A stretch of 64,000 nt of DNA, taken from assembly GCA_964057225.1 (NCBI GenBank), contig OZ059897.1, forward strand, positions 1,612,001 through 1,676,000. Direction: 5' to 3'. The notes beneath the pieces were generated by a model. The model was not told the origin of the DNA, did not search any database, and was given only the letters and a program-made list of their open reading frames with translations. The DNA is from Auanema rhodensis. Its lineage: Eukaryota > Animalia > Nematoda. Shown here piece after piece: positions 18,122 to 37,600 of this stretch (within the stretch, counting starts at the first letter, position 1; each line of letters starts with the position of its first letter). The translations under genes were made by a program, and so were the position numbers.

Positions 18122-19684
18122 GTGAACTCATATCAGTTGATTTCTCGGTTCCTTTTTAAGCTAGCGCAAGTCTGATAAGACAGATCGACGCAGCTTAAAA
18201 ATGGGCATGTGAACGCACTATACTTCTTTGAGAAACGCTTAATACAAAAATTAGTTATGATTGTTCGTGTATGTTGAGTTTCCATGTACACTCAACATTG
18301 CTTCCAAAAACATTTTGACAAAAATTTTCCCAAAAAATTTCAAGATAATTTTACAAAAAGTAGATGTTTTTAGATTCCTTTTTTCAAGGCAAAGACGATG
18401 GAGAATGTTATTCAACGAAAAAATTAATTCTTCAGGGTGAAAATCGAGGATATAAGTGTGGACTTATATCAGTTGATATCTCGGTGCATTTTTAAGCTAG
18501 CGCAAATCTAATAACACAGATCGACGCAGCTTAAAAATCCGCATCGAATGCACTATACTACATTGAGAAACGCTCAATACAAAAATTATTTATGATTGTT
18601 TGAAAAATGATGCATTAGTGTATGTTGCGTTTCCATGTACACTCAACATTGCTTCCAAAAACATTTTGACAAAAATTTTCCCGAAAAATTTCAAGATAAT
18701 TTTACAAAAAGTAGATGTTTTTAGATTCCTTTTTTTAAGGCAAAAACGATGGACAATGTTATTCAACGAAAAAATTAATTCTTCAGGGTGAAAATCGAGG
18801 ATATAAGTGTGGACTTATATCAGTTGATATCTCGGTGCATTTTTAAGCTAGCGCAAATCTAATAATACAGATCGACGCAGCTCAAAAATCCGCATCGAAT
18901 GCACTATACTACATTGAGAAACGCTCAATACAAAAATTATTTATGATTGTTTGAAAAAAGATGCATTAGTGTATGTTGAGTTTCCATGTACGCTCAACAT
19001 TGCTTCCAAAAACATTTTGACAAAAATTTTCCCGAAAAATTTCAAAATAATTTCATGAAAAGTAGATGTGTTTGGATTCCTTTTTTCAAGGCAAAGACGA
19101 TGGACAATGTTATTCAACGAAAAAATTAATTCTTCAGGGTGAAAATCGAGGATATAAGTGTGAACTTATATCAGTTGAAATCTCGGTGCATTTTTAAGCT
19201 AGCGCAAATCTAATAACACAGATCGACGCAGCTTAAAAATCCGCTTCGAATGCACTATACTACATTGAGAAACGCTCAATACAAAAATTATTTATGATTG
19301 TTTGAAAAATGATGCATTAGTGTATGTTGCGTTTCCATGTACACTCAACATTGCTTCCAAAAACATTTTGACAAAAATTTTCCCGAAAAATTTCAAGATA
19401 ATTTTACAAAAAGTAGATGTTTTTAGATTTCTTTTTTTAAGGCAAAGACGATGGACAATGTTATTCAACGAAAAAATTAATTCTTCAGGGTGAAAATCGA
19501 GGATATAAGTGTGAACTTATATCAGTTGATATCTCGGTGCATTTTTAAGCTAACGCAAATCTGATAACACAGATCGTCGCAGCTTAAAAATCCGCTTCGA
19601 ATGCACTATACTACATTGAGAAACGCTCAATACAAAAATTATTTATGATTGTTTGAAAAATGATGCATTAGTGTATGTTGCGTT
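18121..19684 (+). repeat. 351-bp tandem satellite, left segment (~4.5 monomers; the first is degenerate)
   Basis: Same monomer as 34637-64000. The repeated spurious ORFs at 18600 and 19302 are 702 bp apart (2x351). Confidence 0.95.
19679..19684 (+). other. Left target-site duplication TGCGTT
   Basis: Removing the element plus one TGCGTT restores gtgtatgttgcgtttccatgtacac, as seen in intact monomers near 18620 and 19322. Confidence 0.95.
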
Positions 19685-19732
19685 AGTAGAGAGCCATGCC
19701 GAATTTACTAACCACGCCCCCAAACAGTTGCT

Positions 19733-19835
19733 AAAAACATACTTTTGAGGGCGTCAGCTGCTAAAATCATACTTTTGGGGGCGTCAGCTGTCAAAATCAT
19801 ATTTTCGGCGTCAGCTGTCAAAAATATACTTTTCC
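19733..19835 (+). repeat. Subterminal ~27-30-bp repeats, 3 copies of ggcgtcagctg (mirror ~34486-34588)
   Basis: catacttttgagggcgtcagctg / catacttttgggggcgtcagctg / catattttcggcgtcagctg. Confidence 0.85.
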
Positions 19836-21205
19836 TCCCGAGGCAGGCTCTCGAGCCTGCGCATGAATCAAAATGCATGATTTTTTTTTTAAAAATTATT
19901 TTTTAATCTATTTTTAAATCAATTTTTATTATTTATATATTTGTTAATTGTATTTGTAAATATTTTTAAACTTATTTCTTTTTAAATGTATTTTTAATAT
20001 TTATATATATTTTAAATTGTATTTGTAAATATTATTATTTAATTGTTTCTTTTTAAATATATTTTTAATAATATTTCTTTTTAAATGTATTTTAATATTT
20101 ATATATTTTTTAATTGTATCTTTAAAACTGAATAAATTATTTCTCATATATATTGTTTTTTTTTATTTATTTAAATAAATTTAAAAGGTAATCAATATGT
20201 TCACCGTACCTCTTATGGGTTAATCAATGGAACTCATATCGAAGGTTAATTCGATAAGAAGTAATAAATATTTGAACTAAATTTAATGAAACACATATCG
20301 AAGGTTAATTCGATAAGATCGTTAAAACAGGTGCACTACACATGTACCACATGGCAAAAGTTGTGTTCATAAAAATATGATAAATAGCTGTACACCACAT
20401 GTACCTATAACGCTAAAGAATACTTACTATGCCAAGGGGTCATGAGTATATACGAATATTTTCAAACTTTTTAGCATCAAAAATGTTACTTTAAAGTAAT
20501 TGTTGTTGTAGCCCTAATAGTTTATAAATGTTCTGATAGCTAATGTATTTCATAACTATGTTCAAGAATAGAATAAATGTTTCGTAATATATTTATTGAA
20601 CAATAAATTTTCATTTAAAATTAGAACATGTGTTAACATTTTGCAAGAGTTTCTTTTTTACAAAGTGTCTGGAAATGTTGTACTTGTAATCGGATGTGTA
20701 CAAGTCTGTTTTTCGCAACAATCCTGCGTTTCCTCAGAAGGATCCAACATTTTGAATTAGTGTTTCCTAAACTATAGAAATAAGAGTGTACCACAGCTGT
20801 TATAATAAGAATATGAATACAATATTAAACGATCCTATTGTAATATTCCACAATTTTGGCTGACAGTTGTTATTGTATAAGGACTTGTCACAAATGAGTT
20901 GAATTATTGTTAAATATTTGGATTTACGAAATCGAATGCTGTAACAAGTAATTAATAAGCGGATAGTTTACAGGTTGTTAATCCGGCAACTGTTGGCGCA
21001 ATCGGTGTATTTTAGCGCATTTGGCAGCTGTTTGCGCAACAAACTGCTAATTAATGTATAAATGCATATATTTGTTGTAATATATAACAAATAGAAAAGC
21101 TGCATACAGCAGTCAACTGTTTTGTGAAAGAGGCGGAGTGGGTAGAGCTTTACAACAAAGTTTGTATAAAAGGTGGCAAAATTTTTTAGACCGAAATTTG
21201 CATTT

Positions 21206-21325
21206 CAGCTCCGCCAACAAGTCGACTCTACGATCCAGCTCTGTCAACAAGTCTACTCTCCGATCCAGCTCCGCCACCAAGTCTTCTCGCCGATCCACCT
21301 CTGCCAACAAACCGACGATCTGATC
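21206..21325 (+). repeat. 30-bp minisatellite, 4 copies (mirror 32997-33116)
   Basis: cagctccgccaacaagtcgactctacgatc followed by three diverged copies. Confidence 0.88.
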
Positions 21326-21427
21326 CAACGTCAACAGACTGCTGCTAGGACTTTCCTCTACTCTACTTGGACCCTAGACGTAAAAGTTCGTTGTTGTTTA
21401 GGAAAAGCCTCCAATTGGGCTACAAAC

Positions 21428-22021
21428 ATGAAGCGTTCCGCTCTTGTTGATGTAGAGAATATTGTACCTTCGACACCGGAACCGGATGTTCCAAGACCAC
21501 CCACACCAGGACCCAACTTTGCTGCCACATTCTTTGGTAAGGTTTTATTTTTGTTATTAATTATTTTTTGTTTAGACACACCAAAAAAGCAGGTACAAAT
21601 CTCAAAGGATAGCTCTCCACAACAGCCTGTAGTTATGAGACCAATATGTCTCTGCAAAACTTGTAGGGATACATTGCAAGTCGTAGACGAGTACCACTGT
21701 TTCAGCCTCTGTGTCAAGTGTAGAGCGAGGAATGATGCCTTAGGGCTTTTAAAAGTTTTCCGTCATTATAAACCTGAAAATTCAACAATCAATGTGAGAT
21801 TATAAAATTATTAATTCTAATTATTATTTTTTCTTTTACAGATGCGTTCCTATTCTAGCATGTCATCAAAACAATTGTTGAATAATATGGGTTACATTGC
21901 CATTTATACTGATGAGTCAACTGTCAAGTCTTTTGGTTATAAGCAGAATGTGTTCTACTTTAAATTAAGTCAACAGGCGCTCAACTTGAATATGCTTATC
22001 CGTTTTGATCCATCGTTTTGA
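21428..22021 (+). CDS. Putative spliced gene, ~168 aa, Pro-rich N-terminus plus CxxC..CxxC putative zinc-binding motif; exons 21428-21536, 21576-21793, 21842-22021
   Basis: ATG in aaacATG context. Introns gtaagg...tttag (39 bp) and gtgaga...ttacag (48 bp) are AT-rich and keep frame. Motifs CLCKTC and CFSLCVKC. No family recognised. Confidence 0.55.
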
Positions 22022-22270
22022 CTACAACAAGCACAAACTGTTTAATGGACAGTTGGTTGATTTTGTTATGTTATATTTAAATTTTCTTAGCCGTAACATT
22101 TTTTTTTCCAGCTTTCGAAGTTTGAAATTATCCATCAACAGCCGACTCTCTAACCAACTGGTAAGCATTAAAAATTTAAATATTAATCAGTTTATAATTA
22201 TAGGTTATATCATTGTCTTGGCTTTTATGTTTTGCTGGTTTTTTATTGTTACAATATGAACGATTGATCA

Positions 22271-22285
22271 AATAAATCATTTATT
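22271..22285. terminator. Back-to-back AATAAA polyadenylation signals between convergent genes (mirror 32037-32051)
   Basis: aataaa at 22271-22276 on the + strand and tttatt at 22280-22285 (AATAAA on the - strand, 34 bp after the integrase stop). Confidence 0.5.
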
Positions 22286-22318
22286 ATTAATACAATTGTT
22301 TACAACAACAGTGAAAAA

Positions 22319-23386
22319 TTATACATTTAAATTTTCTGCATCTATCCATTCATTAAAGTTGTCGGGATAGCCACTCCATTTTACAAATACTTGACGTTTA
22401 CCATTTCGTGTACGCTCTTTCAAAACTTTCTCAATATAGTACTGGTTGCTTTTATTAGTAGCCAACACAAGTTCAGGCTCATAGAATATTCCCTTTATAC
22501 GTTCACCATTATAATCTACTAGTTTATACACGGTTGGGTTCCCGGCTACAATCTCATCAATTGTGAATAGTTCCATTGTATATCCAGACTCGTAACTTTT
22601 TTCAAAAGTACGCCTGTTCTTGCTTATGCGAACATTATCACCAATTTTGAATCGGTTGCGAACAGCTGGTGCATATTCTTCAACGAATATATTTGCTGTA
22701 ACATCTACGGGGCGCATTTTAATCGACCGATTATAAGATTTGTTTATTCCTTCGACCAAGTCATCTAGTATATCAATCCATCGATGATTATTCTTGTAAT
22801 AGAGATATTTCATCATGCGCGTTTTTAAAGTTCTATTTGCTCGCTCCACCATTGCCGCCTTTTGTGGTGAACTTGTTGATCCATGCAGTATGGCAAATTT
22901 TTTGAATAGTTTTTCACAATGACTATTATAAAACTCTGCACCGTTATCCGTTATTAGTTGGATTGGTATAAAATCCTTGAATACATTTTCAAATGCAGTA
23001 GCAACCTCTAAACCACCTTTAGTTTTCAAAGGCCTAACATATAACATGCGTGTATAAACATCAATCATGGTCAACATGTAAGCATAGCCGTCATTTGATT
23101 TTTTATATTTTTGCATATCAACCAAATCTGCTTGCATTGTTAGGAATCGACCACAGCCTCTAGTCTTTTTAGTCTGCATATGCAGTCTGGTTGGTTTATG
23201 ACGTGTAAAAGTTTCAGAGTCTTGCAAAAAACTTTCAACTTGTGCTTTTGCGATGCCATGCTTTCGCGCTTCCAATAATAGATTTTTGGCAGACGTATAA
23301 GAAGCTGGATGCTTAATATTATAATAAATGTTCTCCAAAACATTACTTCCATAATCTAATGTAGAATCGTTTACGGCCTTTGCCAT
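22319..23386 (-). CDS. Maverick/Polinton retroviral-like DDE integrase (rve) with C-terminal chromodomain, left copy, ~355 aa
   Basis: Motifs IYYN..HPASY, MQADLVDM, LITDNGAEF, MVERANRTLK (D,D(33)E), FKIGDNVRI, and chromodomain YYIEKVL...FVKWSGYPDNFNEWI. The first in-frame ATG is used here; the ORF track starts earlier at a GTG (23425). Confidence 0.93.
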   Translation of the reverse strand: MAKAVNDSTLDYGSNVLENIYYNIKHPASYTSAKNLLLEARKHGIAKAQVESFLQDSETFTRHKPTRLHMQTKKTRGCGRFLTMQADLVDMQKYKKSNDGYAYMLTMIDVYTRMLYVRPLKTKGGLEVATAFENVFKDFIPIQLITDNGAEFYNSHCEKLFKKFAILHGSTSSPQKAAMVERANRTLKTRMMKYLYYKNNHRWIDILDDLVEGINKSYNRSIKMRPVDVTANIFVEEYAPAVRNRFKIGDNVRISKNRRTFEKSYESGYTMELFTIDEIVAGNPTVYKLVDYNGERIKGIFYEPELVLATNKSNQYYIEKVLKERTRNGKRQVFVKWSGYPDNFNEWIDAENLNV

Positions 23387-23924
23387 TCTGTGTTTCTCCC
23401 GCCTGAGGTGTGTAATATGATTCACCAGTGTCAGCGGGTTTTGCCTTTTTATTTATAGCTTTGGATTTGAATGTACGACGCGGAGAGGGTGAATATCGAA
23501 TAACAGCCTTACGATGACCTGGTGTTCTAGGTAATATATTAATAGTAGCATCCAAGTCTGTGACAGCCGATGTGGATGTAGGCACGGGATCAACTGAATC
23601 CTTGTTACTGACGGCAGGCTCTACATTTTTTGCCTTCTTGTTAGGGCTAGAGACCCCATTACTGGCTAAGAATTTGGCTAATACTGAGAATCCATTGGGT
23701 TCCGTCTTTGTTTTATCCAGTACAAAATCCAAAATTTTTGTAATATTTGTGTTTGGTACGGGCTCATTATTAATCACAAGTTGGTTATTTTTGTTTGTAC
23801 GCACCTCTGGAAATCTTTCCCACAGATCGTTATACTTTCGTGGCAGCTTGTATTCTGGCAATAATGGTGGATCAGTAATAAACCTATTTAAAAGAAAAAA
23901 GCTAATTCGCTCGAAATTGTACAT
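23343..23924 (-). CDS. Hypothetical Polinton-type protein upstream of integrase, left copy (193 aa; true 5' end uncertain, possibly spliced)
   Basis: The segment NQLVINNEPVPNTNITKILDFV...EPNGFSVLAKFL resembles, from memory, a conserved Polinton ORF found next to the integrase. Basic C-terminal half. Overlaps the integrase start. Confidence 0.6.
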   Translation of the reverse strand: MYNFERISFFLLNRFITDPPLLPEYKLPRKYNDLWERFPEVRTNKNNQLVINNEPVPNTNITKILDFVLDKTKTEPNGFSVLAKFLASNGVSSPNKKAKNVEPAVSNKDSVDPVPTSTSAVTDLDATINILPRTPGHRKAVIRYSPSPRRTFKSKAINKKAKPADTGESYYTPQAGETQNGKGRKRFYIRLWK

Positions 23925-23968
23925 ATATTCTACTTCAAAAGTTAAAGATTTTTAATATTATACATATT

Positions 23969-24406
23969 TTAAAAATATCTATTTTTTAAATCTGCAAAAA
24001 CTATTAATTTAAAAACTGACATAAATCAAAAAGATATTTTTAAAATACCTTGGTTAACTCGTGTTGGTGGTCGCCATCCATTATGAACCAAATAAAGAAT
24101 ATTCGGATCCCATCCATCCGGATTAAAAATTTTCCCATTAGAAAGTCTAAAAATAAATATAATTTTAAAAATATAATTCAGATATTCTTTCAAACAAATA
24201 TAAACAATTTAAAATCTAAACAATAGTTGTTTAAGATAAAAAAAATGAAAATACCTCATTCCAACTTTTCGTGATTCATTAGACGGATTAACCAAGTTTC
24301 TTGCATCAGGAAAACCAGATTTTAATGTTTCAAGCAATAGCCCATCGTCGCTATCGATATGCATCGATAATACATCACTCCCATCAGTAACATTTATTAA
24401 AAGCAT
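23969..24406 (-). CDS. TDP-43-NTD-like spliced gene, left copy; exons 24406-24255, 24146-24049 and, tentatively, 23991-23969
   Basis: Mirror image of 29916-30353. Confidence 0.72.
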
Positions 24407-24564
24407 AGCCTAAACATGAAAATATCGATATGCATTGATAATACATGACTCCCATCAGTAACATTTATTAAAAGCATAGCCTAAACATGAAAATATCGAT
24501 ATGCATCGATAATACATCACTCCCATTAGTAACATATATTAAAAACATAGTCTAAACATGAAAA
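24352..24564. repeat. 71-bp tandem triplication spanning the 5' end of the TDP-43-NTD-like gene (mirror ~29758-29970)
   Basis: tatcgatatgcat recurs at 24352, 24423 and 24494. Confidence 0.9.
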
Positions 24565-25018
24565 ATATTAGTTTTAGAGTGGGGTACACACCGACAGGTT
24601 GATTTAGACACAGATAAGAGAATCGAATATGAAAAAGAAAAATTATCTCAATCATTATCATGCTAATCGAGGGATGCTAATTCACTCTCCAACAAATAGT
24701 TAACCAATTGTAGTAAAAAAAAAATAGTAGCTACTTTTACAAAAACAAGCATTAAATATTTTTATACAAAAATAAACTGGAATTATTCCAAATAAACAAT
24801 AAGAAAGCAACGCGAACTACAGAACAAAAGGAAAAGTTAATGGAAGAATGTGATGTTGAAAGTTTCTCGTCTTCCTCTGGGTCTCTGCCCACAGACACGT
24901 CTCACCCTTTCCCCCCCCACCCCCCCGGCCCTAAGCCCCGCCATTTTTGCCGAAATGCACACAGTTCACCGGGAATGGGGGGTAAACCCGCCAAACCGGG
25001 GGAAACTGCACTGGATCC

Positions 25019-26491
25019 GTTCCTTTTTCTCAGAAATTATCAACTAAAATCAAAAATAGATAATCCGAGAATAGGTAGTCAGATGTGTAGAATCTGAAAT
25101 TCCGGGTTAATCTTGGCTAGGAATTCTCCTGTTTCCGGAAAAACGGTTTATATCGAGATCATCCACAAGATTTGTTCACAAAAAAGTTCAGGCTGTGGGC
25201 ACTGTGTTTCCGGTGAATGTTCCTTTTTCTCAGAAATTATCAACTAAAATCAAAAATAGATAATCCGAGAATAGGTAGTCAGATGTGTAGAATCTGAAAT
25301 TCCGGGTTAAATTTGGCTGTGACTTTTCACTTTTCCGGAAAAACTGTTTATATCGAGATCATCCACAAGATTTGTTCACAAAAAAGTTCAGGCTGTGGGC
25401 ACTGTGTTTCCGGTGAATGTTCCTTTTTCTCAGAAATTATCAACTAAAATCAAATAAAGATGATCCGAGGTTAGGTATTCAGATGTATAGAATCTGAAAT
25501 TCCGGGTTAAATTTGGCTAGGAATTCTCCTGTTTCCGGAAAAACTGTTTATATCGAGATCATCCACAAGATTTGTTCACAAAAAAGTTCAGGCTGTGGGC
25601 ACTGTGTTTCCGGTGAATGTTCCTTTTTCTCAGAAATTATCAACTAAAATCAAAAATAGATAATCCGAGAATAGGTAGTCAGATGTGTAGAATCTGAAAT
25701 TCCGGGTTAATCTTGGCTAGGAATTCTCCTGTTTCCGGAAAAACGGTTTATATCGAGATCATCCACAAGATTTGTTCACAAAAAAGTTCAGGCTGTGGGC
25801 ACTGTGTGCCCGGTGAATGTTCCTTTTTCTCCAAGACCATCATCGAAAATCAAATAAAGATGATCCGAGATTGGGTATTCAGATGTGTAGAATCTGAAAT
25901 TCCGGGTTAAATTTGGCTGTGACTTTTCACTTTTCCGGAAAAACTGTTTATATCGAGATCATCCACAAGATTTGTTCACAAAAAAGTTCAGGCTGTGGGC
26001 ACTGTGTTTCCGGTGAATGTTCCTTTTTCTCAGAAATTATCAACTAAAATCAAATAAAGATGATCCGAGGTCAGGTATTCAGATGTGTATAATTTGAAAT
26101 TCCGGGTTAAATTTGGCTGTGACTTTTCACTTTTCCGGTAAAACTGTTTATATCGAGATCATCCACAAGATTTGTTCACAAAAAAGTTCAGGCTGTGGGC
26201 ACTGTGTGTCCGGTTAATGTTCCTTTCTCTCAAAAATTATCAACTAAAATCAAATAAAGATGATCCGAGGTTGGGTATTCAGATGTGTAGAATCTGAAAT
26301 TCCGGGTTAAATTTGGCTAGGAATTCTCCTGTTTCCGGAAAAACGGTTTATATCGAGATCATCCACAAGTTTTGTTCACAAAAAAGTTCAGGCTGTGGGC
26401 ACTGTGTGTCCGGTGAATGTTCCTTTTTCTCAAAAATTATCAACTAAAATCAAAAATAGATAATCCGAGAATAGGTATTCAGATGTGTAGA
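25019..26491 (+). repeat. Internal 200-bp tandem array, forward half (~7.3 units)
   Basis: tcctttttctc... (with minor variants) recurs at 25021, 25221, 25421 ... 26421. Confidence 0.95.
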
Positions 26492-29305
26492 TTAACCCGG
26501 AATTCCAGATTCTACACATCTGAATACCCAATCTGAGCTTTTTTGTGAACAAATCTTGTGGATGATCTCGATATAAACCGTTTTTCCGGAAACAGGAGAA
26601 TTCCTAGCCAAATTTAACCCGGAATTTCAAATTCTACACATCTGAATACCTATTCTCGGATTATCTATTTTTGATTTTAGTTGATAATTTTTGAGAAAAA
26701 GGAACATTCACCGGACACACAGTGCCCACAGCCTGAACTTTTTTGTGAACAAATCTTGTGGATGATCTCGATATAAACAGTTTTTCCGGAAAAGTGAAAA
26801 GTCACAGCCAAATTTAACCCGGAATTTCAGATTCTACACATCTGAATACCCAACCTCGGATCATCTTTATTTGATTTTTGTTGATAATTTTTGAGAAAAA
26901 GGAACATTCACCGGACACACAGTGCCCACAGCCTGAACTTTTTTGTGAACAAATCTTGTGGATGATCTCGATATAAACAGTTTTTCCGGAAAAGTGAAAA
27001 GTCACAGCCAAATTTAACCCGGAATTTCAGATTCTGCACATCTGAATACCTATTCTCGGATTATCTATTTTTGATTTTAGTTGATAATTTTTGAGAAAAA
27101 GGAACATTCACCGGAAACACAGTGCCCACAGCCTGAACTTTTTTGTGAACAAATCTTGTGGATGATCTCGATATAAATAGTTTTTCCGGAAAAGTGAAAA
27201 GTCACAGCCAAATTTAACCCGGAATTTCAAATTCTACACATCTGAATACCCAACCTCGGATCATCTTTATTTGATTTTTGTTGATAATTTTTGAGAAAAA
27301 GGAACATTCACCGGACACACAGTGCCCACAGCCTGAACTTTTTTGTGAACAAATCTTGTGGATGATCTCGATATAAACCGTTTTTCCGGAAACAGGAGAA
27401 TTCCTAGCCAAATTTAACCCGGAATTTCAGATTCTACACATCTGAATACCTAACCTCGGATCATCTTTATTTGATTTTAGTTGATAATTTCTGAGAAAAA
27501 GGAACATTCACCGGAAACACAGTGCCCACAGCCTGAACTTTTTTGTGAACAAATCTTGTGGATGATCTCGATATAAACAGTTTTTCCGGAAAAGTGAAAA
27601 GTCACAGCCAAATTTAACCCGGAATTTCAGATTCTACACATCTGAATACCCAACCTCGGATCATCTTTATTTGATTTTCGATGATGGTCTTGGAGAAAAA
27701 GGAACATTCACCGGGCACACAGTGCCCACAGCCTGAACTTTTTTGTGAACAAATCTTGTGGATGATCTCGATATAAACCGTTTTTCCGGAAACAGGAGAA
27801 TTCCTAGCCAAGATTAACCCGGAATTTCAGATTCTACACATCTGACTACCTATTCTCGGATTATCTATTTTTGATTTTAGTTGATGGTCTTGGAGAAAAA
27901 GGAACATTCACCGGGCACACAGTGCCCACAGCCTGAACTTTTTTGTGAACAAATCTTGTGGATGATCTCGATATAAACCGTTTTTCCGGAAACAGGAGAA
28001 TTCCTAGCCAAATTTAACCCGGAATTTCAGATTCTACACATCTGAATACCTAACCTCGGATCATCTTTATTTGATTTTAGTTGATAATTTCTGAGAAAAA
28101 GGAACATTCACCGGAAACACAGTGCCCACAGCCTGAACTTTTTTGTGAACAAATCTTGTGGATGATCTCGATATAAACAGTTTTTCCGGAAAAGTGAAAA
28201 GTCACAGCCAAATTTAACCCGGAATTTCAAATTCTACACATCTGAATACCCAACCTCGGATCATCTTTATTTGATTTTTGTTGATAATTTTTGAGAAAAA
28301 GGAACATTCACCGGACACACAGTGCCCACAGCCTGAACTTTTTTGTGAACAAATCTTGTGGATGATCTCGATATAAACCGTTTTTCCGGAAACAGGAGAA
28401 TTCCTAGCCAAATTTAACCCGGAATTTCAGATTCTACACATCTGAATACCTAACCTCGGATCATCTTTATTTGATTTTAGTTGATAATTTCTGAGAAAAA
28501 GGAACATTCACCGGAAACACAGTGCCCACAGCCTGAACTTTTTTGTGAACAAATCTTGTGGATGATCTCGATATAAACAGTTTTTCCGGAAAAGTGAAAA
28601 GTCACAGCCAAATTTAACCCGGAATTTCAGATTCTACACATCTGAATACCCAACCTCGGATCATCTTTATTTGATTTTTGTTGATAATTTTTGAGAAAAA
28701 GGAACATTCACCGGACACACAGTGCCCACAGCCTGAACTTTTTTGTGAACAAATCTTGTGGATGATCTCGATATAAACCGTTTTTCCGGAAACAGGAGAA
28801 TTCCTAGCCAAATTTAACCCGGAATTTCAGATTCTACACATCTGAATACCTAACCTCGGATCATCTTTATTTGATTTTAGTTGATAATTTCTGAGAAAAA
28901 GGAACATTCACCGGAAACACAGTGCCCACAGCCTGAACTTTTTTGTGAACAAATCTTGTGGATGATCTCGATATAAACAGTTTTTCCGGAAAAGTGAAAA
29001 GTCACAGCCAAATTTAACCCGGAATTTCAGATTCTACACATCTGAATACCCAACCTCGGATCATCTTTATTTGATTTTCGATGATGGTCTTGGAGAAAAA
29101 GGAACATTCACCGGGCACACAGTGCCCACAGCCTGAACTTTTTTGTGAACAAATCTTGTGGATGATCTCGATATAAACCGTTTTTCCGGAAACAGGAGAA
29201 TTCCTAGCCAAGATTAACCCGGAATTTCAGATTCTACACATCTGACTACCTATTCTCGGATTATCTATTTTTGATTTTAGTTGATAATTTCTGAGAAAAA
29301 GGAAC
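26492..29305 (-). repeat. Internal 200-bp tandem array, inverted half (~14 units)
   Basis: Reverse complement of the forward unit. ggaacattcaccgg recurs every 200 bp from 26701 to 29101. Confidence 0.95.
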
Positions 29306-29915
29306 GGATCCAGTGCAGTTTCCCCCGGTTTGGCGGGTTTACCCCCCATTCCCGGTGAACTGTGTGCATTTCGGCAAAAATGGCGGGGCTTAGGGCCGGG
29401 GGGGGGGGGGGAAAGGGTGAGACGTGTCTGTGGGCAGAGACCCAGAGGAAGACGAGAAACTTTCAACATCACATTCTTCCATTAACTTTTCCTTTTGTTC
29501 TGTAGTTCGCGTTGCTTTCTTATTGTTTATTTGGAATAATTCCAGTTTATTTTTGTATAAAAATATTTAATGCTTGTTTTTGTAAAAGTAGCTACTATTT
29601 TTTTTTTACTACAATTGGTTAACTATTTGTTGGAGAGTGAATTAGCATCCCTCGATTAGCATGATAATGATTGAGATAATTTTTCTTTTTCATATTCGAT
29701 TCTCTTATCTGTGTCTAAATCAACCTGTCGGTGTGTACCCCACTCTAAAACTAATATTTTTCATGTTTAGACTATGTTTTTAATATATGTTACTAATGGG
29801 AGTGATGTATTATCGATGCATATCGATATTTTCATGTTTAGGCTATGCTTTTAATAAATGTTACTGATGGGAGTCATGTATTATCAATGCATATCGATAT
29901 TTTCATGTTTAGGCT

Positions 29916-30353
29916 ATGCTTTTAATAAATGTTACTGATGGGAGTGATGTATTATCGATGCATATCGATAGCGACGATGGGCTATTGCTTGAAACATTAA
30001 AATCTGGTTTTCCTGATGCAAGAAACTTGGTTAATCCGTCTAATGAATCACGAAAAGTTGGAATGAGGTATTTTCATTTTTTTTATCTTAAACAACTATT
30101 GTTTAGATTTTAAATTGTTTATATTTGTTTGAAAGAATATCTGAATTATATTTTTAAAATTATATTTATTTTTAGACTTTCTAATGGGAAAATTTTTAAT
30201 CCGGATGGATGGGATCCGAATATTCTTTATTTGGTTCATAATGGATGGCGACCACCAACACGAGTTAACCAAGGTATTTTAAAAATATCTTTTTGATTTA
30301 TGTCAGTTTTTAAATTAATAGTTTTTGCAGATTTAAAAAATAGATATTTTTAA
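29916..30353 (+). CDS. Spliced gene for a stand-alone TDP-43 N-terminal-domain-like protein (~90 aa); exons 29916-30067, 30176-30273 and, tentatively, 30331-30353
   Basis: A GT-AG intron (30068-30175) joins in frame to give MLLINVTDGSDVLSMHIDSDDGLLLETLKSGFPDARNLVNPSNESRKVGMRLSNGKIFNPDGWDPNILYLVHNGWRPPTRVNQ. This matches the TDP-43 NTD pattern I.VT..DDG..LL.T....FP.A..L..NP..G.RL..G....P..GW....Y.V. Confidence 0.72.
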
Positions 30354-30397
30354 AATATGTATAATATTAAAAATCTTTAACTTTTGAAGTAGAATAT

Positions 30398-30979
30398 ATG
30401 TACAATTTCGAGCGAATTAGCTTTTTTCTTTTAAATAGGTTTATTACTGATCCACCATTATTGCCAGAATACAAGCTGCCACGAAAGTATAACGATCTGT
30501 GGGAAAGATTTCCAGAGGTGCGTACAAACAAAAATAACCAACTTGTGATTAATAATGAGCCCGTACCAAACACAAATATTACAAAAATTTTGGATTTTGT
30601 ACTGGATAAAACAAAGACGGAACCCAATGGATTCTCAGTATTAGCCAAATTCTTAGCCAGTAATGGGGTCTCTAGCCCTAACAAGAAGGCAAAAAATGTA
30701 GAGCCTGCCGTCAGTAACAAGGATTCAGTTGATCCCGTGCCTACATCCACATCGGCTGTCACAGACTTGGATGCTACTATTAATATATTACCTAGAACAC
30801 CACGTCATCGTAAGGCTGTTATTCGATATTCACCCTCTCCGCGTCGTACATTCAAATCCAAAGCTATAAATAAAAAGGCAAAACCCGCTGACACTGGTGA
30901 ATCATATTACACACCTCAGGCGGGAGAAACACAGAATGGCAAAGGCCGTAAACGATTCTACATTAGATTATGGAAGTAA
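30398..30979 (+). CDS. Hypothetical Polinton-type protein, right copy
   Basis: Mirror of 23343-23924 with one substitution (PGH vs PRH). Possible splice acceptor at 30438. Confidence 0.6.
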   Translation: MYNFERISFFLLNRFITDPPLLPEYKLPRKYNDLWERFPEVRTNKNNQLVINNEPVPNTNITKILDFVLDKTKTEPNGFSVLAKFLASNGVSSPNKKAKNVEPAVSNKDSVDPVPTSTSAVTDLDATINILPRTPRHRKAVIRYSPSPRRTFKSKAINKKAKPADTGESYYTPQAGETQNGKGRKRFYIRLWK

Positions 30980-32003
30980 TGTTTTGGAGAACATTTATTA
31001 TAATATTAAGCATCCAGCTTCTTATACGTCTGCCAAAAATCTATTATTGGAAGCGCGAAAGCATGGCATCGCAAAAGCACAAGTTGAAAGTTTTTTGCAA
31101 GACTCTGAAACTTTTACACGTCATAAACCAACCAGACTGCATATGCAGACTAAAAAGACTAGAGGCTGTGGTCGATTCCTAACAATGCAAGCAGATTTGG
31201 TTGATATGCAAAAATATAAAAAATCAAATGACGGCTATGCTTACATGTTGACCATGATTGATGTTTATACACGCATGTTATATGTTAGGCCTTTGAAAAC
31301 TAAAGGTGGTTTAGAGGTTGCTACTGCATTTGAAAATGTATTCAAGGATTTTATACCAATCCAACTAATAACGGATAACGGTGCAGAGTTTTATAATAGT
31401 CATTGTGAAAAACTATTCAAAAAATTTGCCATACTGCATGGATCAACAAGTTCACCACAAAAGGCGGCAATGGTGGAGCGAGCAAATAGAACTTTAAAAA
31501 CGCGCATGATGAAATATCTCTATTACAAGAATAATCATCGATGGATTGATATACTAGATGACTTGGTCGAAGGAATAAACAAATCTTATAATCGGTCGAT
31601 TAAAATGCGCCCCGTAGATGTTACAGCAAATATATTCGTTGAAGAATATGCACCAGCTGTTCGCAACCGATTCAAAATTGGTGATAATGTTCGCATAAGC
31701 AAGAACAGGCGTACTTTTGAAAAAAGTTACGAGTCTGGATATACAATGGAACTATTCACAATTGATGAGATTGTAGCCGGGAACCCAACCGTGTATAAAC
31801 TAGTAGATTATAATGGTGAACGTATAAAGGGAATATTCTATGAGCCTGAACTTGTGTTGGCTACTAATAAAAGCAACCAGTACTATATTGAGAAAGTTTT
31901 GAAAGAGCGTACACGAAATGGTAAACGTCAAGTATTTGTAAAATGGAGTGGCTATCCCGACAACTTTAATGAATGGATAGATGCAGAAAATTTAAATGTA
32001 TAA
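30936..32003 (+). CDS. Maverick/Polinton DDE integrase with chromodomain, right copy
   Basis: Identical translation to the left copy. ATG at 30936, with no stops or frameshifts. Confidence 0.93.
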   Translation: MAKAVNDSTLDYGSNVLENIYYNIKHPASYTSAKNLLLEARKHGIAKAQVESFLQDSETFTRHKPTRLHMQTKKTRGCGRFLTMQADLVDMQKYKKSNDGYAYMLTMIDVYTRMLYVRPLKTKGGLEVATAFENVFKDFIPIQLITDNGAEFYNSHCEKLFKKFAILHGSTSSPQKAAMVERANRTLKTRMMKYLYYKNNHRWIDILDDLVEGINKSYNRSIKMRPVDVTANIFVEEYAPAVRNRFKIGDNVRISKNRRTFEKSYESGYTMELFTIDEIVAGNPTVYKLVDYNGERIKGIFYEPELVLATNKSNQYYIEKVLKERTRNGKRQVFVKWSGYPDNFNEWIDAENLNV

Positions 32004-32300
32004 TTTTTCACTGTTGTTGTAAACAATTGTATTAATAATAAATGATTTATTTGATCAATCGTTCATATTGTAACAATAAAAAACCAGCAAAACATAAAAG
32101 CCAAGACAATGATATAACCTATAATTATAAACTGATTAATATTTAAATTTTTAATGCTTACCAGTTGGTTAGAGAGTCGGCTGTTGATGGATAATTTCAA
32201 ACTTCGAAAGCTGGAAAAAAAAATGTTACGGCTAAGAAAATTTAAATATAACATAACAAAATCAACCAACTGTCCATTAAACAGTTTGTGCTTGTTGTAG

Positions 32301-32894
32301 TCAAAACGATGGATCAAAACGGATAAGCATATTCAAGTTGAGCGCCTGTTGACTTAATTTAAAGTAGAACACATTCTGCTTATAACCAAAAGACTTGACA
32401 GTTGACTCATCAGTATAAATGGCAATGTAACCCATATTATTCAACAATTGTTTTGATGACATGCTAGAATAGGAACGCATCTGTAAAAGAAAAAATAATA
32501 ATTAGAATTAATAATTTTATAATCTCACATTGATTGTTGAATTTTCAGGTTTATAATGACGGAAAACTTTTAAAAGCCCTAAGGCATCATTCCTCGCTCT
32601 ACACTTGACACAGAGGCTGAAACAGTGGTACTCGTCTACGACTTGCAATGTATCCCTACAAGTTTTGCAGAGACATATTGGTCTCATAACTACAGGCTGT
32701 TGTGGAGAGCTATCCTTTGAGATTTGTACCTGCTTTTTTGGTGTGTCTAAACAAAAAATAATTAATAACAAAAATAAAACCTTACCAAAGAATGTGGCAG
32801 CAAAGTTGGGTCCTGGTGTGGGTGGTCTTGGAACATCCGGTTCCGGTGTCGAAGGTACAATATTCTCTACATCAACAAGAGCGGAACGCTTCAT
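32301..32894 (-). CDS. Putative spliced Cys-rich gene, right copy
   Basis: Mirror image of 21428-22021. Confidence 0.55.
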
Positions 32895-34636
32895 GTTTGT
32901 AGCCCAATTGGAGGCTTTTCCTAAACAACAACGAACTTTTACGTCTAGGGTCCAAGTAGAGTAGAGGAAAGTCCTAGCAGCAGTCTGTTGACGTTGGATC
33001 AGATCGTCGGTTTGTTGGCAGAGGTGGATCGGCGAGAAGACTTGGTGGCGGAGCTGGATCGGAGAGTAGACTTGTTGACAGAGCTGGATCGTAGAGTCGA
33101 CTTGTTGGCGGAGCTGAAATGCAAATTTCGGTCTAAAAAATTTTGCCACCTTTTATACAAACTTTGTTGTAAAGCTCTACCCACTCCGCCTCTTTCACAA
33201 AACAGTTGACTGCTGTATGCAGCTTTTCTATTTGTTATATATTACAACAAATATATGCATTTATACATTAATTAGCAGTTTGTTGCGCAAACAGCTGCCA
33301 AATGCGCTAAAATACACCGATTGCGCCAACAGTTGCCGGATTAACAACCTGTAAACTATCCGCTTATTAATTACTTGTTACAGCATTCGATTTCGTAAAT
33401 CCAAATATTTAACAATAATTCAACTCATTTGTGACAAGTCCTTATACAATAACAACTGTCAGCCAAAATTGTGGAATATTACAATAGGATCGTTTAATAT
33501 TGTATTCATATTCTTATTATAACAGCTGTGGTACACTCTTATTTCTATAGTTTAGGAAACACTAATTCAAAATGTTGGATCCTTCTGAGGAAACGCAGGA
33601 TTGTTGCGAAAAACAGACTTGTACACATCCGATTACAAGTACAACATTTCCAGACACTTTGTAAAAAAGAAACTCTTGCAAAATGTTAACACATGTTCTA
33701 ATTTTAAATGAAAATTTATTGTTCAATAAATATATTACGAAACATTTATTCTATTCTTGAACATAGTTATGAAATACATTAGCTATCAGAACATTTATAA
33801 ACTATTAGGGCTACAACAACAATTACTTTAAAGTAACATTTTTGATGCTAAAAAGTTTGAAAATATTCGTATATACTCATGACCCCTTGGCATAGTAAGT
33901 ATTCTTTAGCGTTATAGGTACATGTGGTGTACAGCTATTTATCATATTTTTATGAACACAACTTTTGCCATGTGGTACATGTGTAGTGCACCTGTTTTAA
34001 CGATCTTATCGAATTAACCTTCGATATGTGTTTCATTAAATTTAGTTCAAATATTTATTACTTCTTATCGAATTAACCTTCGATATGAGTTCCATTGATT
34101 AACCCATAAGAGGTACGGTGAACATATTGATTACCTTTTAAATTTATTTAAATAAATAAAAAAAAACAATATATATGAGAAATAATTTATTCAGTTTTAA
34201 AGATACAATTAAAAAATATATAAATATTAAAATACATTTAAAAAGAAATATTATTAAAAATATATTTAAAAAGAAACAATTAAATAATAATATTTACAAA
34301 TACAATTTAAAATATATATAAATATTAAAAATACATTTAAAAAGAAATAAGTTTAAAAATATTTACAAATACAATTAACAAATATATAAATAATAAAAAT
34401 TGATTTAAAAATAGATTAAAAAATAATTTAAAAAAAAAAATCATGCATTTTGATTCATGCGCAGGCTCGAGAGCCTGCCTCGGGAGGAAAAGTATATTTT
34501 TGACAGCTGACGCCGAAAATATGATTTTGACAGCTGACGCCCCCAAAAGTATGATTTTAGCAGCTGACGCCCTCAAAAGTATGTTTTTAGCAACTGTTTG
34601 GGGGCGTGGTTAGTAAATTCGGCATGGCTCTCTACT

Positions 34637-34642
34637 TGCGTT
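34637..34642 (+). other. Right target-site duplication TGCGTT
   Basis: Immediately follows ...ctctctact and is identical to 19679-19684. Confidence 0.95.
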
Positions 34643-37600
34643 TCCATGTACACTCAACATTGCTTCCAAAAACATTTTGACAAAAATTTTCCCGAAAAAT
34701 TTCAAGATAATTTTACAAAAAGTAGATGTTTTTAGATTTTTTTTTTTAAGGCAAAGACGATGGACAATGTTATTCAACGAAAAAATTAATTCTTCAGGGT
34801 GAAAATCGAGGATATAAGTGTGAACTTATATCAGTTAATATCTCGGTGCATTTTTAAGCTAACTCAAATCTAATAACACAGATCGACGCAGCTTAAAAAT
34901 CCGCATCGAATGCACTATATAACATTGAGAAACGCTCAATACAAAAATTATTTATGATTGTTTGAAAAATGATGCATTAGTGTATGTTGAGTTTCCATGT
35001 ACACTCAACATTGCTTCCAAAAACATTTTGACAAAAATTTTCCCGAAAAATTTCAAGATAATTTTACAAAAAGTAGATGTTTTTGAATTTCTTTTATTAA
35101 GGCGAAAACGATGGACAATGTTATTCAACGAAAAAATTAATTCTTCAGGGTGAAAATCGAGGATATAAGTGTGAACTTATATCAGTTGATATCTCGGTGC
35201 ATATTTAAACTAGCGCAAATCTAATAACACAGATCGACGCAGCTTAAAAATCCGTTTCGAATGCACTATACTACATTAAGAAACGCTCAATACGAAAATT
35301 ATTTATGATTGTTTGAAAAAAGATGCATTAGTGTATGTTGAGTTTCCATGTACACTCAACATTGCTTCCAAAAACATTTTGACAAAAATTTTCCCGAAAA
35401 ATTTCAAGATAATTTTACAAAAAGTAGATGTTTTTGAATTTCTTTTATTAAGGCGAAAACGATGGACAATGTTATTCAACGAAAAAATTAATTCTTCAGG
35501 GTGAAAATCGAGGATATAAGTGTGAACTTATATCAATTGATATCTCGGTGCATTTTTAAGCTAACTCAAATCTGATAACACAGATCGACGCAGCTTAAAA
35601 ATCCGTTTCGAATGCACTATACTACATTGAGAAACGCTCAATACAAAAATTATTTATGATTGTTTGAAAAATGATGCATTAGTGTATGTTGAGTTTCCAT
35701 GTACACTCAACATTGCTTCCAAAAACATTTTGACAAAAATTTTCCCGAAAAATTTCAAGATAATTTTACAAAAAGTAGATGTTTTTGAATTTCTTTTATT
35801 AAGGCGAAAACGATGGACAATGTTATTCAACGAAAAAATTAATTCTTCAGGGTGAAAATCGAGGATATAAGTGTGAACTTATATCAATTGATATCTCGGT
35901 GCATTTTTAAGCTAGCGCATATCTGATAACATAGATCGACGCAGCTTAAAAATCCGCATCGAATGCACTATATAACAATGAGAAACGCTCAATACAAAAA
36001 TTATTTATGATTGTTTGAAAAATGATGCATTAGTGTATGTTGAGTTTCCATGTACACTCAACATTGCTTCCAAAAACATTTTGACAAAAATTTTCCCGAA
36101 AAATTTCAAGATAATTTTACAAAAAGTAGATGTTTTTGAATTTCTTTTATTAAGGCGAAAACGATGGACAATGTTATTCAACGAAAAAATTAATTCTTCA
36201 GGGTGAAAATCGAGGATATAAGTGTGAACTTATATCAGTTAATATCTCGGTGCATTTTTAAGCTAACTCAAATCTAATAACACAGATCGACGCAGCTTAA
36301 AAATCCGCATCGAATGCACTATATAACATTGAGAAACGCTCAATACAAAAATTATTTATGATTGTTTGAAAAATGATGCATTAGTGTATGTTGAGTTTCC
36401 ATGTACACTCAACATTGCTTCCAAAAACATTTTGACAAAAATTTTCCCGAAAAATTTCAAGATAATTTTACAAAAAGTAGATGTTTTTGAATTTCTTTTA
36501 TTAAGGCGAAAACGATGGACAATGTTATTCAACGAAAAAATTAATTCTTCAGGGTGAAAATCGAGGATATAAGTGTGAACTTATATCAGTTGATATCTCG
36601 GTGCATATTTAAACTAGCGCAAATCTAATAACACAGATCGACGCAGCTTAAAAATCCGTTTCGAATGCACTATACTACATTAAGAAACGCTCAATACGAA
36701 AATTATTTATGATTGTTTGAAAAAAGATGCATTAGTGTATGTTGAGTTTCCATGTACACTCAACATTGCTTCCAAAAACATTTTGACAAAAATTTTCCCG
36801 AAAAATTTCAAGATAATTTTACAAAAAGTAGATGTTTTTGAATTTCTTTTATTAAGGCGAAAACGATGGACAATGTTATTCAACGAAAAAATTAATTCTT
36901 CAGGGTGAAAATCGAGGATATAAGTGTGAACTTATATCAATTGATATCTCGGTGCATTTTTAAGCTAACTCAAATCTGATAACACAGATCGACGCAGCTT
37001 AAAAATCCGTTTCGAATGCACTATACTACATTGAGAAACGCTCAATACAAAAATTATTTATGATTGTTTGAAAAATGATGCATTAGTGTATGTTGAGTTT
37101 CCATGTACACTCAACATTGCTTCCAAAAACATTTTGACAAAAATTTTCCCGAAAAATTTCAAGATAATTTTACAAAAAGTAGATGTTTTTGAATTTCTTT
37201 TATTAAGGCGAAAACGATGGACAATGTTATTCAACGAAAAAATTAATTCTTCAGGGTGAAAATCGAGGATATAAGTGTGAACTTATATCAATTGATATCT
37301 CGGTGCATTTTTAAGCTAGCGCATATCTGATAACATAGATCGACGCAGCTTAAAAATCCGCATCGAATGCACTATATAACAATGAGAAACGCTCAATACA
37401 AAAATTATTTATGATTGTTTGAAAAATGATGCATTAGTGTATGTTGAGTTTCCATGTACACTCAACATTGCTTCCAAAAACATTTTGACAAAAATTTTCC
37501 CGAAAAATTTCAAGATAATTTTACAAAAAGTAGATGTTTTTAGATTCCTTTTTTCAAGGCGAAGACGATGGACAATGTTATTCAACGAAAAAATTAATTC

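What the first reader, a model, noticed from the sequence alone, without database searches (positions are those of the whole stretch)
19685..34636. Fully palindromic, integrase-only Maverick/Polinton: a snap-back type element inserted as a unit
Seen: the whole 15-kb element is an inverted duplication, with 5.3-kb gene-bearing arms and an inverted central array, bounded by AGTAGAGAG termini and a perfect 6-bp TSD. Established: canonical Mavericks have TIRs of roughly 0.1-1.5 kb, 6-bp TSDs, and encode pPolB, ATPase, protease and capsids. None of those four is present here. Inference: one end of a Maverick was copied back on itself during strand-displacement replication, like snap-back defective genomes of linear DNA viruses. 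That gives a molecule with two valid ends and two integrases, which depends on a helper for replication. An in-place rearrangement that preserved both original ends is a less simple alternative.
Basis: partly seen in the sequence, partly recalled or inferred. Interest (0 to 1): 0.9.

Follow-up and report, generated by a model that had tools for sequence, protein, structure and literature searches.

The report
Head-to-head Maverick remnant in satellite DNA
A 15-kb virus-like transposon remnant, probably in a nematode genome, consists of two almost identical inverted copies of the integrase-bearing end of a Maverick, joined inside an internal repeat array and inserted cleanly into satellite DNA; this is an unusual architecture, but a single copy cannot show how it arose.

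Summary
The 14,952-bp element (19685-34636) has two inverted arms of 5.33 kb that differ by four small events, identical AGTAGAGAG ends, and a perfect 6-bp duplication (TGCGTT) within one unit of a 351-bp satellite that continues in phase on the other side.

Two claims need correcting:
- It is not fully palindromic. The central 200-bp arrays hold 7.4 and 13.9 units, their unit order is not mirrored, and the centre has two breakpoints.
- It is not integrase-only. Each arm also carries a second conserved gene of unknown function, shortened at its 5' end.

No polymerase, ATPase, protease or capsid was detected. The integrase is intact, lacks a zinc finger, carries a chromodomain, and most resembles MELD-virus and Mavirus integrases in fold. 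Its nearest named relatives are nematode proteins. The ends and the duplication fit Mavericks, not Ginger or LTR elements.

I read it as a non-autonomous head-to-head derivative of a nematode Maverick. Formation off the chromosome before integration is my leading explanation (about 0.45). A single recent snap-back does not explain the arrays, and in-place rearrangement remains open. Only one copy was seen.

The parts
19679..19684 (.). Left copy of the 6-bp target-site duplication, TGCGTT
19685..34636 (.). Whole element, 14,952 bp
19685..25018 (+). Left arm: terminus, non-coding or cargo-like stretch, integrase, second gene, 71-bp repeats
29306..34636 (-). Right arm, an inverted copy of the left arm (99.906% identical)
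19685..19880 (+). Terminal region (GC 0.46). It begins AGTAGAGAG, carries about four subterminal direct repeats of roughly 30 bp (19725-19841) and a short GC-rich inverted repeat. The mirror copy is at 34441-34636
19911..20105 (.). AT-rich repeats of about 68 bp (mirror copy around 34218-34411)
21170..21802 (+). Unassigned 211-codon open frame with 30-bp internal repeats. It has no relatives and no family, so it may not be a gene. An identical mirror copy lies at 32520-33152 (-)
22319..23425 (-). Integrase, left copy: 368 codons, rve core plus C-terminal chromodomain, no stops, full length relative to relatives
30897..32003 (+). Integrase, right copy, identical to the left copy
23343..23924 (-). 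Second conserved gene, left copy (193-codon ORF), function unknown. It is broken once, by loss of its 5' part relative to all relatives. The retained part has no stop or frameshift
30398..30979 (+). Second conserved gene, right copy. It is open and differs from the left copy by one residue
24352..24564 (.). Three 71-bp tandem repeats (mirror copy at 29758-29970)
25019..26491 (+). Left 200-bp array, 7.4 units. Inward unit order is A-E-C-A-B-D'-C plus a partial unit
26492..26532 (-). Central junction: a 40-nt reverse piece of a unit (phase 92 to 53). With the end of the left array it forms a stem of about 21 bp and a 19-nt loop. A second breakpoint follows
26533..29305 (-). Right 200-bp array, inverted, 13.9 units. 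Inward unit order is A-B-C-D-C-D-C-A'-B-C-D-E-D plus a partial unit
34637..34642 (.). Right copy of the 6-bp target-site duplication, TGCGTT
18267..19684 (.). Host 351-bp satellite, left of the insertion (4 units)
34637..64000 (.). Host 351-bp satellite, right of the insertion (about 84 units), in phase with the left part

Best explanation
The element is a non-autonomous derivative of a nematode-type Maverick/Polinton. It consists of two inverted copies of the integrase-bearing end, in the order terminus, about 2.4 kb with no recognised gene, integrase, a shortened neighbouring gene, short repeats, and a 200-bp repeat array. The two copies are joined head to head inside that array. An integrase-type reaction placed the element, or its precursor, into one unit of a 351-bp satellite and made a 6-bp duplication. 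Those points are shown.

The rest is inferred. The head-to-head molecule most likely arose off the chromosome from linear copies of the element. One route is the polymerase switching strands within the repeat array. The other is end-joining of two molecules that each kept only the integrase end. The product has two valid identical ends, and the integrase then inserted it as one unit. The two 200-bp arrays have since been reshuffled, or they came from two different templates. The arms are either young or kept alike by arm-to-arm gene conversion.

The element has no polymerase or capsid genes, so it cannot copy or package itself. It does keep two intact integrase genes. Their HP1-like chromodomain may explain the landing site in satellite DNA.
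For: Maverick identity:
- 6-bp duplication and an AGT/(AG)n-type terminus. Vertebrate Mavericks show (AGT)2 or (AG)3 end motifs with perfect 6-bp duplications (PMC8097293).
- The order terminus, 2.4 kb, integrase matches the nematode layout of left TIR, 2-5 kb cargo, integrase (bioRxiv 10.1101/2022.07.12.499685).
- The integrase has an rve core and a chromodomain. D100, D160 and E194 are invariant in an alignment with 11 relatives. There is only one cysteine in the N-terminal ~97 residues, so no zinc finger; Polinton/Maverick integrases lack that finger (PMC2836005).
- The best viral fold matches are a MELD-virus integrase (2.1e-19) and the Mavirus integrase (4.9e-19), ahead of retroviral integrases.
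- The nearest named relatives are from Auanema and Caenorhabditis remanei.

Non-autonomy: no polymerase, ATPase, protease or capsid family was found. The largest unassigned open frame is 211 codons, whereas intact nematode Polinton genes need at least 900 (pPolB), 390 (MCP) and 730 (fusogen) residues (PMC10748475).

Insertion rather than two separate events: one duplication and an in-phase satellite.

Real DNA rather than a fold-back read: the flanks are collinear and the arrays are not mirrored.

Off-chromosome origin: both ends are precise and identical and the flanks are untouched. Symmetric self-complementary defective genomes are a recognised class (PMC13506859).
Against: - Only one copy is in hand, so nothing shows that the palindrome ever moved as a unit.
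- The arrays are not mirrored: 5.07% difference in mirror register, and 13 private sites in 4,000 nt against 1 substitution in 5,334 nt of arm (p = 1.4e-4). A single recent snap-back does not predict this.
- The centre has two breakpoints. That fits end-joining or serial template switches, and those can happen on the chromosome too.
- The host satellite 2 kb away has its own orientation flip, so local host rearrangement is plausible.
- I did not examine the genomic context of the integrase's relatives, so its placement among Maverick integrases rests on fold hits, end motifs and taxonomy rather than on a tree.
Confidence: 0.45

Rival explanations
1. In-place rearrangement. A conventional Maverick inserted here and made the duplication. 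Later a break inside it was repaired using the element's own inverted ends. The right terminal repeat invaded the left one, on the same or the sister chromatid or on another copy, and copied the left arm inward. The new end was then joined to the broken left part inside the 200-bp array, and the polymerase and capsid genes were lost.
For: It preserves both ends and the duplication just as well. The two-breakpoint centre with a short inverted filler looks like break repair. Fold-back and inverted-duplication repair is well documented (PMC7467729, PMC10622511). The neighbouring 182-bp satellite flips orientation at about 17428-17441. If another copy served as template, unequal and non-mirrored arrays are expected.
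Against: It requires loss of some 10 kb of interior down to the right terminal repeat, followed by copying of more than 5 kb. Ordinary host fold-back events copy outward into flanking DNA, and the flanks here are untouched. No trace of a right-hand (polymerase-side) part remains.
Confidence: 0.3
2. Single recent snap-back. One end was copied back on itself in one replication round, giving a mirror-image molecule that then integrated.
For: The arms are 99.906% identical and the ends are identical. The turn-round lies in a repeat array that offers many places to switch.
Against: The arrays differ two-fold in length, their unit order is not mirrored, and private variants are about 17 times denser than arm substitutions. 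The centre has two breakpoints rather than one. This reading survives only with later array turnover, and in that form it is already part of my best explanation.
Confidence: 0.12
3. Assembly or read artefact. A fold-back chimeric read, or a wrong path through a shared terminal repeat, produced a right arm that does not exist, and the true interior lies elsewhere.
For: Near-identical 5-kb arms and a repeat-rich centre are hard to assemble, and the window is almost entirely satellite DNA.
Against: A fold-back read gives exactly mirrored arrays and inverted flanks. Here the arrays are different sequences and the flanks are collinear and in phase. The arms also carry a few real differences, including one substitution that changes a residue.
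Confidence: 0.08

Closest known systems
Nematode Mavericks/Polintons (Caenorhabditis and relatives; Widen et al., bioRxiv 10.1101/2022.07.12.499685; Jeong et al., PMC10748475)
   Same: The end motif type, the 6-bp duplication, the order terminus, cargo-sized stretch, integrase, the chromodomain integrase without a zinc finger, and nematode relatives.
   Different: It has no pPolB, ATPase, protease, capsid or fusogen gene. The inverted repeat is 5.33 kb, against a reported 0.05-1.5 kb, and contains genes. Both ends are the integrase end.
Snap-back and copy-back defective viral genomes (review PMC13506859), and defective adenovirus genomes cited there
   Same: A largely self-complementary molecule that keeps the end signals and loses the replication genes.
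   Different: This one is integrated in a chromosome with a duplication. The centre is not mirrored and has two breakpoints. It keeps an intact integrase, whereas the review describes snap-back genomes of RNA viruses as non-coding.
Host fold-back inversions / inverted duplications from break repair (PMC7467729, PMC10622511)
   Same: An inverted duplication with a short stem-and-loop spacer at the turn-round, lying in repeat-rich DNA.
   Different: The duplication stops exactly at the element's ends and does not run into host DNA.
Ginger1 and Ginger2/Tdd DNA transposons (PMC2836005)
   Same: DNA transposons whose main gene is a retroviral-type integrase.
   Different: Ginger has TGTNR ends, 4-5-bp duplications, an H2C2 zinc finger and 40-270-bp inverted repeats. 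None of these is seen here.
Internally deleted non-autonomous Polintons and fold-back-type derivatives of other DNA transposons (from my own knowledge, not checked with a tool)
   Same: Loss of internal genes while both ends are kept.
   Different: The loss here comes with an inverted duplication of one end that includes an intact gene.

Membership tests
Maverick/Polinton | 6-bp target-site duplication | tested here: met
   TGCGTT on both sides, with the satellite in phase. Criterion from PMC8097293 and PMC10748475.
Maverick/Polinton | Ends of the 5'-AG / (AGT)n / (AG)n type | tested here: met
   Both ends read AGTAGAGAG. The motifs are reported for vertebrate Mavericks in PMC8097293; I found no nematode-specific motif in the papers I read.
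Maverick/Polinton | Terminal inverted repeats within the reported range (46-1,447 bp, or 100-1,500 bp) | tested here: not met
   The inverted repeat is 5,334 bp and carries genes. Ranges from PMC8097293 and PMC10748475.
Maverick/Polinton | Retroviral-like integrase without the N-terminal zinc finger | tested here: met
   rve plus Chromo domains, D-D-E positions invariant, and one cysteine in the N-terminal ~97 residues. Criterion from PMC2836005.
Maverick/Polinton | Integrase groups with annotated Maverick-class integrases | tested here: inconclusive
   The best viral fold hits are MELD-virus and Mavirus integrases, and the nearest named relatives are nematode proteins. I built no tree with annotated Maverick integrases and did not examine the context of the relatives.
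Maverick/Polinton | [quoted passage not shown] | tested here: not met
   No match in the 27 open frames scanned, and the largest unassigned frame is 211 codons.
Maverick/Polinton | Morphogenesis module: major and minor capsid proteins, packaging ATPase, protease | tested here: not met
   No family match. The second gene is not a jelly-roll and has no fold match. Pfam may not cover Polinton capsids well, so the lack of room is the stronger argument.
Ginger DNA transposons | TGTNR ends, 4-5-bp duplication, H2C2 zinc finger | tested here: not met
   AGTAG ends, a 6-bp duplication and no zinc finger. Criteria from PMC2836005.
LTR retrotransposon (chromovirus) | Direct long terminal repeats, and reverse transcriptase/RNase H next to the integrase | tested here: not met
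   The repeats are inverted, and no RT or RNase H family was found.
Snap-back defective genome | Self-complementary over nearly its whole length, with a minimal turn-round | tested here: inconclusive
   The arms meet this. The central 4.3 kb does not: the arrays are unequal and non-mirrored and there are two breakpoints.
Snap-back defective genome | Produced during replication of a free linear genome | not testable with these tools
   This needs population or read-level evidence from the source organism.
Host fold-back inversion | The inverted duplication continues into the flanking chromosome | tested here: not met
   The flanks are collinear and in phase, and they share no similarity with the element.

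The most novel reading that the evidence does not exclude
The element is a germline-captured defective genome of a Maverick. On this reading a head-to-head dimer of the integrase end formed while the element was copying itself as free linear DNA, and its own integrase then inserted it as one unit, with the chromodomain steering it to satellite heterochromatin. That would be a sequence fossil of the extrachromosomal replication stage that has long been proposed for Mavericks but never observed. It would also be the first palindromic, integrase-retaining satellite-like derivative of this class.
Probability: 0.35. Interest if true: 0.75.

Novelty: new variant of a known kind. Interest (0 to 1): 0.55.

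Why it matters
Mavericks are thought to replicate as free linear genomes primed by a protein, but in animals this stage is known only by inference. A derivative with two copies of the same end, integrated with a clean duplication, is the kind of product such replication should occasionally make. If further copies with different duplications exist, that stage becomes testable from sequence alone. The element also shows a Maverick integrase surviving intact after the loss of all replication and capsid genes. That bears on how integrase-only transposons arise. An HP1-like chromodomain together with an insertion into satellite DNA suggests chromatin-directed targeting. All of this rests on one copy, so for now it is a well-documented oddity rather than a demonstrated new class.

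Tried and rejected
- Two independent inverted insertions: rejected. A single 6-bp duplication and an in-phase satellite flank the whole element.
- Fold-back read artefact: unlikely. The arrays are not mirrored and the flanks are collinear.
- Central 200-bp array captured from the flanking satellites: rejected, since there is no similarity.
- Second gene as the minor capsid protein, which is the integrase's neighbour in vertebrate Mavericks (PMC8097293): not supported. The model is a small alpha/beta domain plus a disordered tail, not a jelly-roll. There was no match in Pfam, PHROGs, PDB sequences, BFVD or PDB folds.
- The 211-codon frame at 21170-21802: no relatives and no family.
- The 193-codon ORF gave nothing in the word-indexed search. 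Only the full HMMER scan found its relatives.
- RNA genes: none in Rfam or ARAGORN.
- Clustering of arm differences at the outer end, which would have pointed to an old terminal repeat plus a fresh copy: not seen. The four events are spread along the arm.
- Array divergence as pure point mutation: largely rejected. Most differences are mosaics of shared variants, although private sites are still denser than arm substitutions.
- Literature: two searches found no palindromic or head-to-head Maverick. Kapitonov and Jurka 2006 is not held.
- The phage, plasmid, E. coli and prokaryote genome collections were not searched, because they cannot contain a nematode locus.
Full report
SCOPE AND CONDUCT

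- I list no break positions inside genes.
- The window does not look human.
- I could not tell whether endogenous nematode Mavericks fall under the bar on fetching a virus of animals, so that step is named under referred steps.
- One slip: in my private reasoning I wrote out from memory a stretch of a host chromodomain protein (HP1) for comparison.

1. THE OBSERVATION

Arms. The region 19685-34636 (14,952 bp) is built from two inverted arms. The stretches 19685-25018 and 34636-29306 align over 5,334 columns at 99.906% identity. Four small events, spread along the arm, account for the differences: a length change with one mismatch in a T/A homopolymer near the outer end, one substitution, and a 2-nt indel at the inner edge.

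Ends. Both ends are identical over the 16 bases compared and begin AGTAGAGAG.

Duplication. TGCGTT lies immediately outside each end, at 19679-19684 and 34637-34642. The element sits inside one unit of a 351-bp satellite (18267-19684 and 34637-64000). The 200 nt after the right-hand hexamer are 99% identical to the 200 nt that follow the same hexamer one period upstream of the insertion point. The satellite is therefore continuous and in phase, with six bases duplicated. The chance of a 6-nt match at this composition is about 6e-4. The element shares no similarity with either flank.

This part of the finding is confirmed.

2. WHERE THE OBSERVATION NEEDS CORRECTING

(a) The centre is not a mirror image.
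- The 200-bp array has 7.4 units on the left (25019-26491) and 13.9 units on the right (26533-29305), in the opposite orientation.
- Pairwise comparison of the units as they stand shows distinct variants. Read inward, the left array is A-E-C-A-B-D'-C and the right array is A-B-C-D-C-D-C-A'-B-C-D-E-D.
- Only the outermost pair corresponds. The mirror register gives 5.07% mismatches and a centre-out register gives 6.00%.
- The turn-round has two breakpoints. The forward array stops at unit phase 73. A 40-nt reverse piece (phase 92 to 53) follows, making a stem of about 21 bp with a 19-nt loop. The reverse array then restarts at phase 173.

(b) The element is not integrase-only.
- The open frame just upstream of each integrase (193-codon ORF, 23343-23924 on the minus strand) found nothing in the word-indexed search.
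- The full HMMER scan found 11 relatives of 190-272 residues, the best at E = 7.7e-25 and 41% identity.
- The named relatives are all from Auanema sp. JU1783, where at least four loci encode them.
- The relatives share an N-terminal part that has no counterpart in the arm, and only one frame matches. I therefore count one break in this gene, a loss at its 5' end, with no stop or frameshift in what remains.
- The ORF is open in both arms, and the two copies differ by one residue.
- Its function is unknown. There is no match in Pfam, PHROGs, PDB sequences, BFVD or PDB folds.
- The model shows a small confident alpha/beta domain and a long disordered basic tail, not a jelly-roll. It is therefore not the minor capsid protein that neighbours the integrase in vertebrate Mavericks (PMC8097293).

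3. WHAT THE ELEMENT IS

Integrase.
- The 368-codon ORF (22319-23425 on the minus strand; identical copy at 30897-32003 on the plus strand) has an rve core and a chromodomain.
- It is full length relative to relatives of 340-380 residues, and D100, D160 and E194 are invariant among 12 sequences.
- The core matches foamy-virus and other retroviral integrase cores, and the C-terminus matches HP1, Rhino and CBX chromodomains.
- The N-terminal ~97 residues hold a single cysteine, so there is no H2C2 finger. That absence distinguishes Polinton/Maverick integrases from Ginger and Gypsy integrases (PMC2836005).
- A structure model (mean pLDDT 74.5, core about 90) finds a MELD-virus integrase and the Mavirus virophage integrase as its best viral matches, ahead of all retroviral ones.
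- Sequence relatives number 109. The best is 49% identical, and the named ones are from Auanema and Caenorhabditis remanei.

Ends and layout.
- The end motif and the 6-bp duplication match what is reported for Mavericks (PMC8097293; PMC10748475). They do not match Ginger, which has TGTNR ends and 4-5-bp duplications.
- The layout terminus, 2.4 kb, integrase matches the nematode pattern of a 2-5-kb cargo region between the left repeat and the integrase.

Missing genes.
- I scanned 27 of the 52 stop-to-stop frames of at least 45 codons listed between 19685 and 26700; those scanned ranged from 53 to 377 codons. None matched a polymerase, packaging ATPase, protease, capsid, reverse transcriptase or RNase H family.
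- The largest unassigned frame has 211 codons and no relatives. Intact nematode Polinton genes need at least 900, 730 and 390 residues for pPolB, fusogen and major capsid.
- I did not scan the short frames inside the 200-bp units.

Verdict on membership. Polintons are defined by having a protein-primed polymerase (PMC5499653), so this is a derivative of a Maverick, not an autonomous member.

4. HOW IT AROSE AND WORKS

Shown:
- One integrase-type insertion event flanks the whole structure.
- Both ends are the same (integrase-side) end.
- The two halves meet inside the repeat array at a two-breakpoint junction.
- The integrase genes are intact and identical.

Excluded or unlikely:
- Two separate inverted insertions are excluded, because there is one duplication and the satellite is in phase.
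- A simple fold-back read artefact is unlikely, because the arrays are physically different sequences and the flanks are collinear.

Open: whether the head-to-head form arose before or after integration.

The arrays are the most informative feature.
- A one-step recent copy-back predicts mirrored arrays as alike as the arms.
- In fact each unit's best match in the other array differs by 1.57% (left to right) and 2.15% (right to left).
- Most of that is recombination among shared variants. With one crossover, the left units are explained with 0, 0, 1, 0, 1, 5 and 3 mismatches.
- Even so, 13 sites in 4,000 nt are private to one array, against one substitution in 5,334 nt of arm (odds ratio 17, p = 1.4e-4).
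- Three readings fit. The palindrome may be older than its arms look, with the arms homogenised by conversion while the arrays drift and reshuffle. The two halves may come from two templates with different arrays. Or units have been lost differentially.

My leading reading (about 0.45) is an off-chromosome origin from linear copies, followed by integration as a unit. The route would be strand switching in the array or end-joining of two truncated molecules that each kept the integrase end. I prefer it because the ends and flanks are untouched, and because self-complementary defective genomes are a known class (PMC13506859).

In-place repair primed from the right terminal repeat (about 0.3) gives the same flanks. 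It is favoured by the break-repair look of the centre and by a second orientation flip in the host's 182-bp satellite only 2 kb away. It needs a large interior loss.

Two further inferences:
- The element lacks replication and packaging genes, so it depends on other elements for copying.
- The chromodomain may bind methylated histone tails and steer insertion to satellite heterochromatin.

5. COMPARISON AND NOVELTY

The closest known relatives are nematode Mavericks. The element shares their ends, duplication, integrase type and layout. It differs in gene content and in having a 5.33-kb gene-bearing inverted repeat. In its workings it resembles snap-back defective genomes and fold-back inversions. 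It fails the Ginger and LTR-element membership tests.

Two literature searches found no palindromic or head-to-head Maverick. The library is incomplete, and the founding Polinton paper is not held.

I rate the element a new variant of a known kind, with interest 0.55. It is well documented and unusual, but it is a single copy with an unresolved origin.

6. LIMITS
- The source genome is in none of the searchable collections.
- The integrase is absent from the protein collection at high identity; the best match is 49%.
- Other copies, empty sites and reads could therefore not be examined.
- The genomic context of the relatives was deliberately not fetched.

Noticed in passing
window 17428-18121: The host 182-bp satellite (1-17428) flips to the opposite orientation at about 17428-17441 and runs 3.7 units inverted. 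A transition of roughly 145 nt then leads into the 351-bp satellite. This is a second inversion junction inside a tandem array, 2 kb from the element.
   Followed up: partly
window 18267-19684 and 34637-64000: The hexamer TGCGTT occurs three times in the left flank but only once in the 29-kb right flank, and that one occurrence is the duplication copy itself. Most right-hand 351-bp units seem to carry a variant hexamer at that phase (inferred from the tandem-repeat summary, not checked unit by unit), so the satellite would have position-specific variants on either side of the insertion.
   Followed up: partly
relatives P0040, P0050, P0059, P0082: Some integrase relatives of 430-480 residues also carry Pfam PF08398, which I recall is a parvovirus coat-protein N-terminal domain. 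I did not check the name or the fusion.
   Followed up: no
relative P0001: The top-scoring integrase relative has 562 residues and carries the extra Pfam domains PF24139 and PF13683. It lies on a 102-kb contig. I did not examine its architecture.
   Followed up: no
window 21206-21325 (mirror copy in the right arm): Three to four 30-bp direct repeats lie inside the unassigned 211-codon frame and give a 10-residue peptide repeat. The frame ends in a cysteine-rich stretch. It has no relatives.
   Followed up: partly
window 24352-24564 and 29758-29970: Three 71-bp tandem repeats that contain short palindromic ATCGAT-type motifs lie between the second gene and the 200-bp array.
   Followed up: no
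window 19725-19841 and mirror copy: About four subterminal direct repeats of roughly 30 bp, plus a short GC-rich inverted repeat, lie within the first 200 bp. These are plausible protein-binding sites at the element's ends. GC here is 0.46, against about 0.31 for the neighbouring sequence.
   Followed up: no
Auanema sp. JU1783 proteins P0110, P0112, P0121, P0122: The second-gene family is present at four or more loci in Auanema, which suggests it belongs to a repeated element there.
   Followed up: partly
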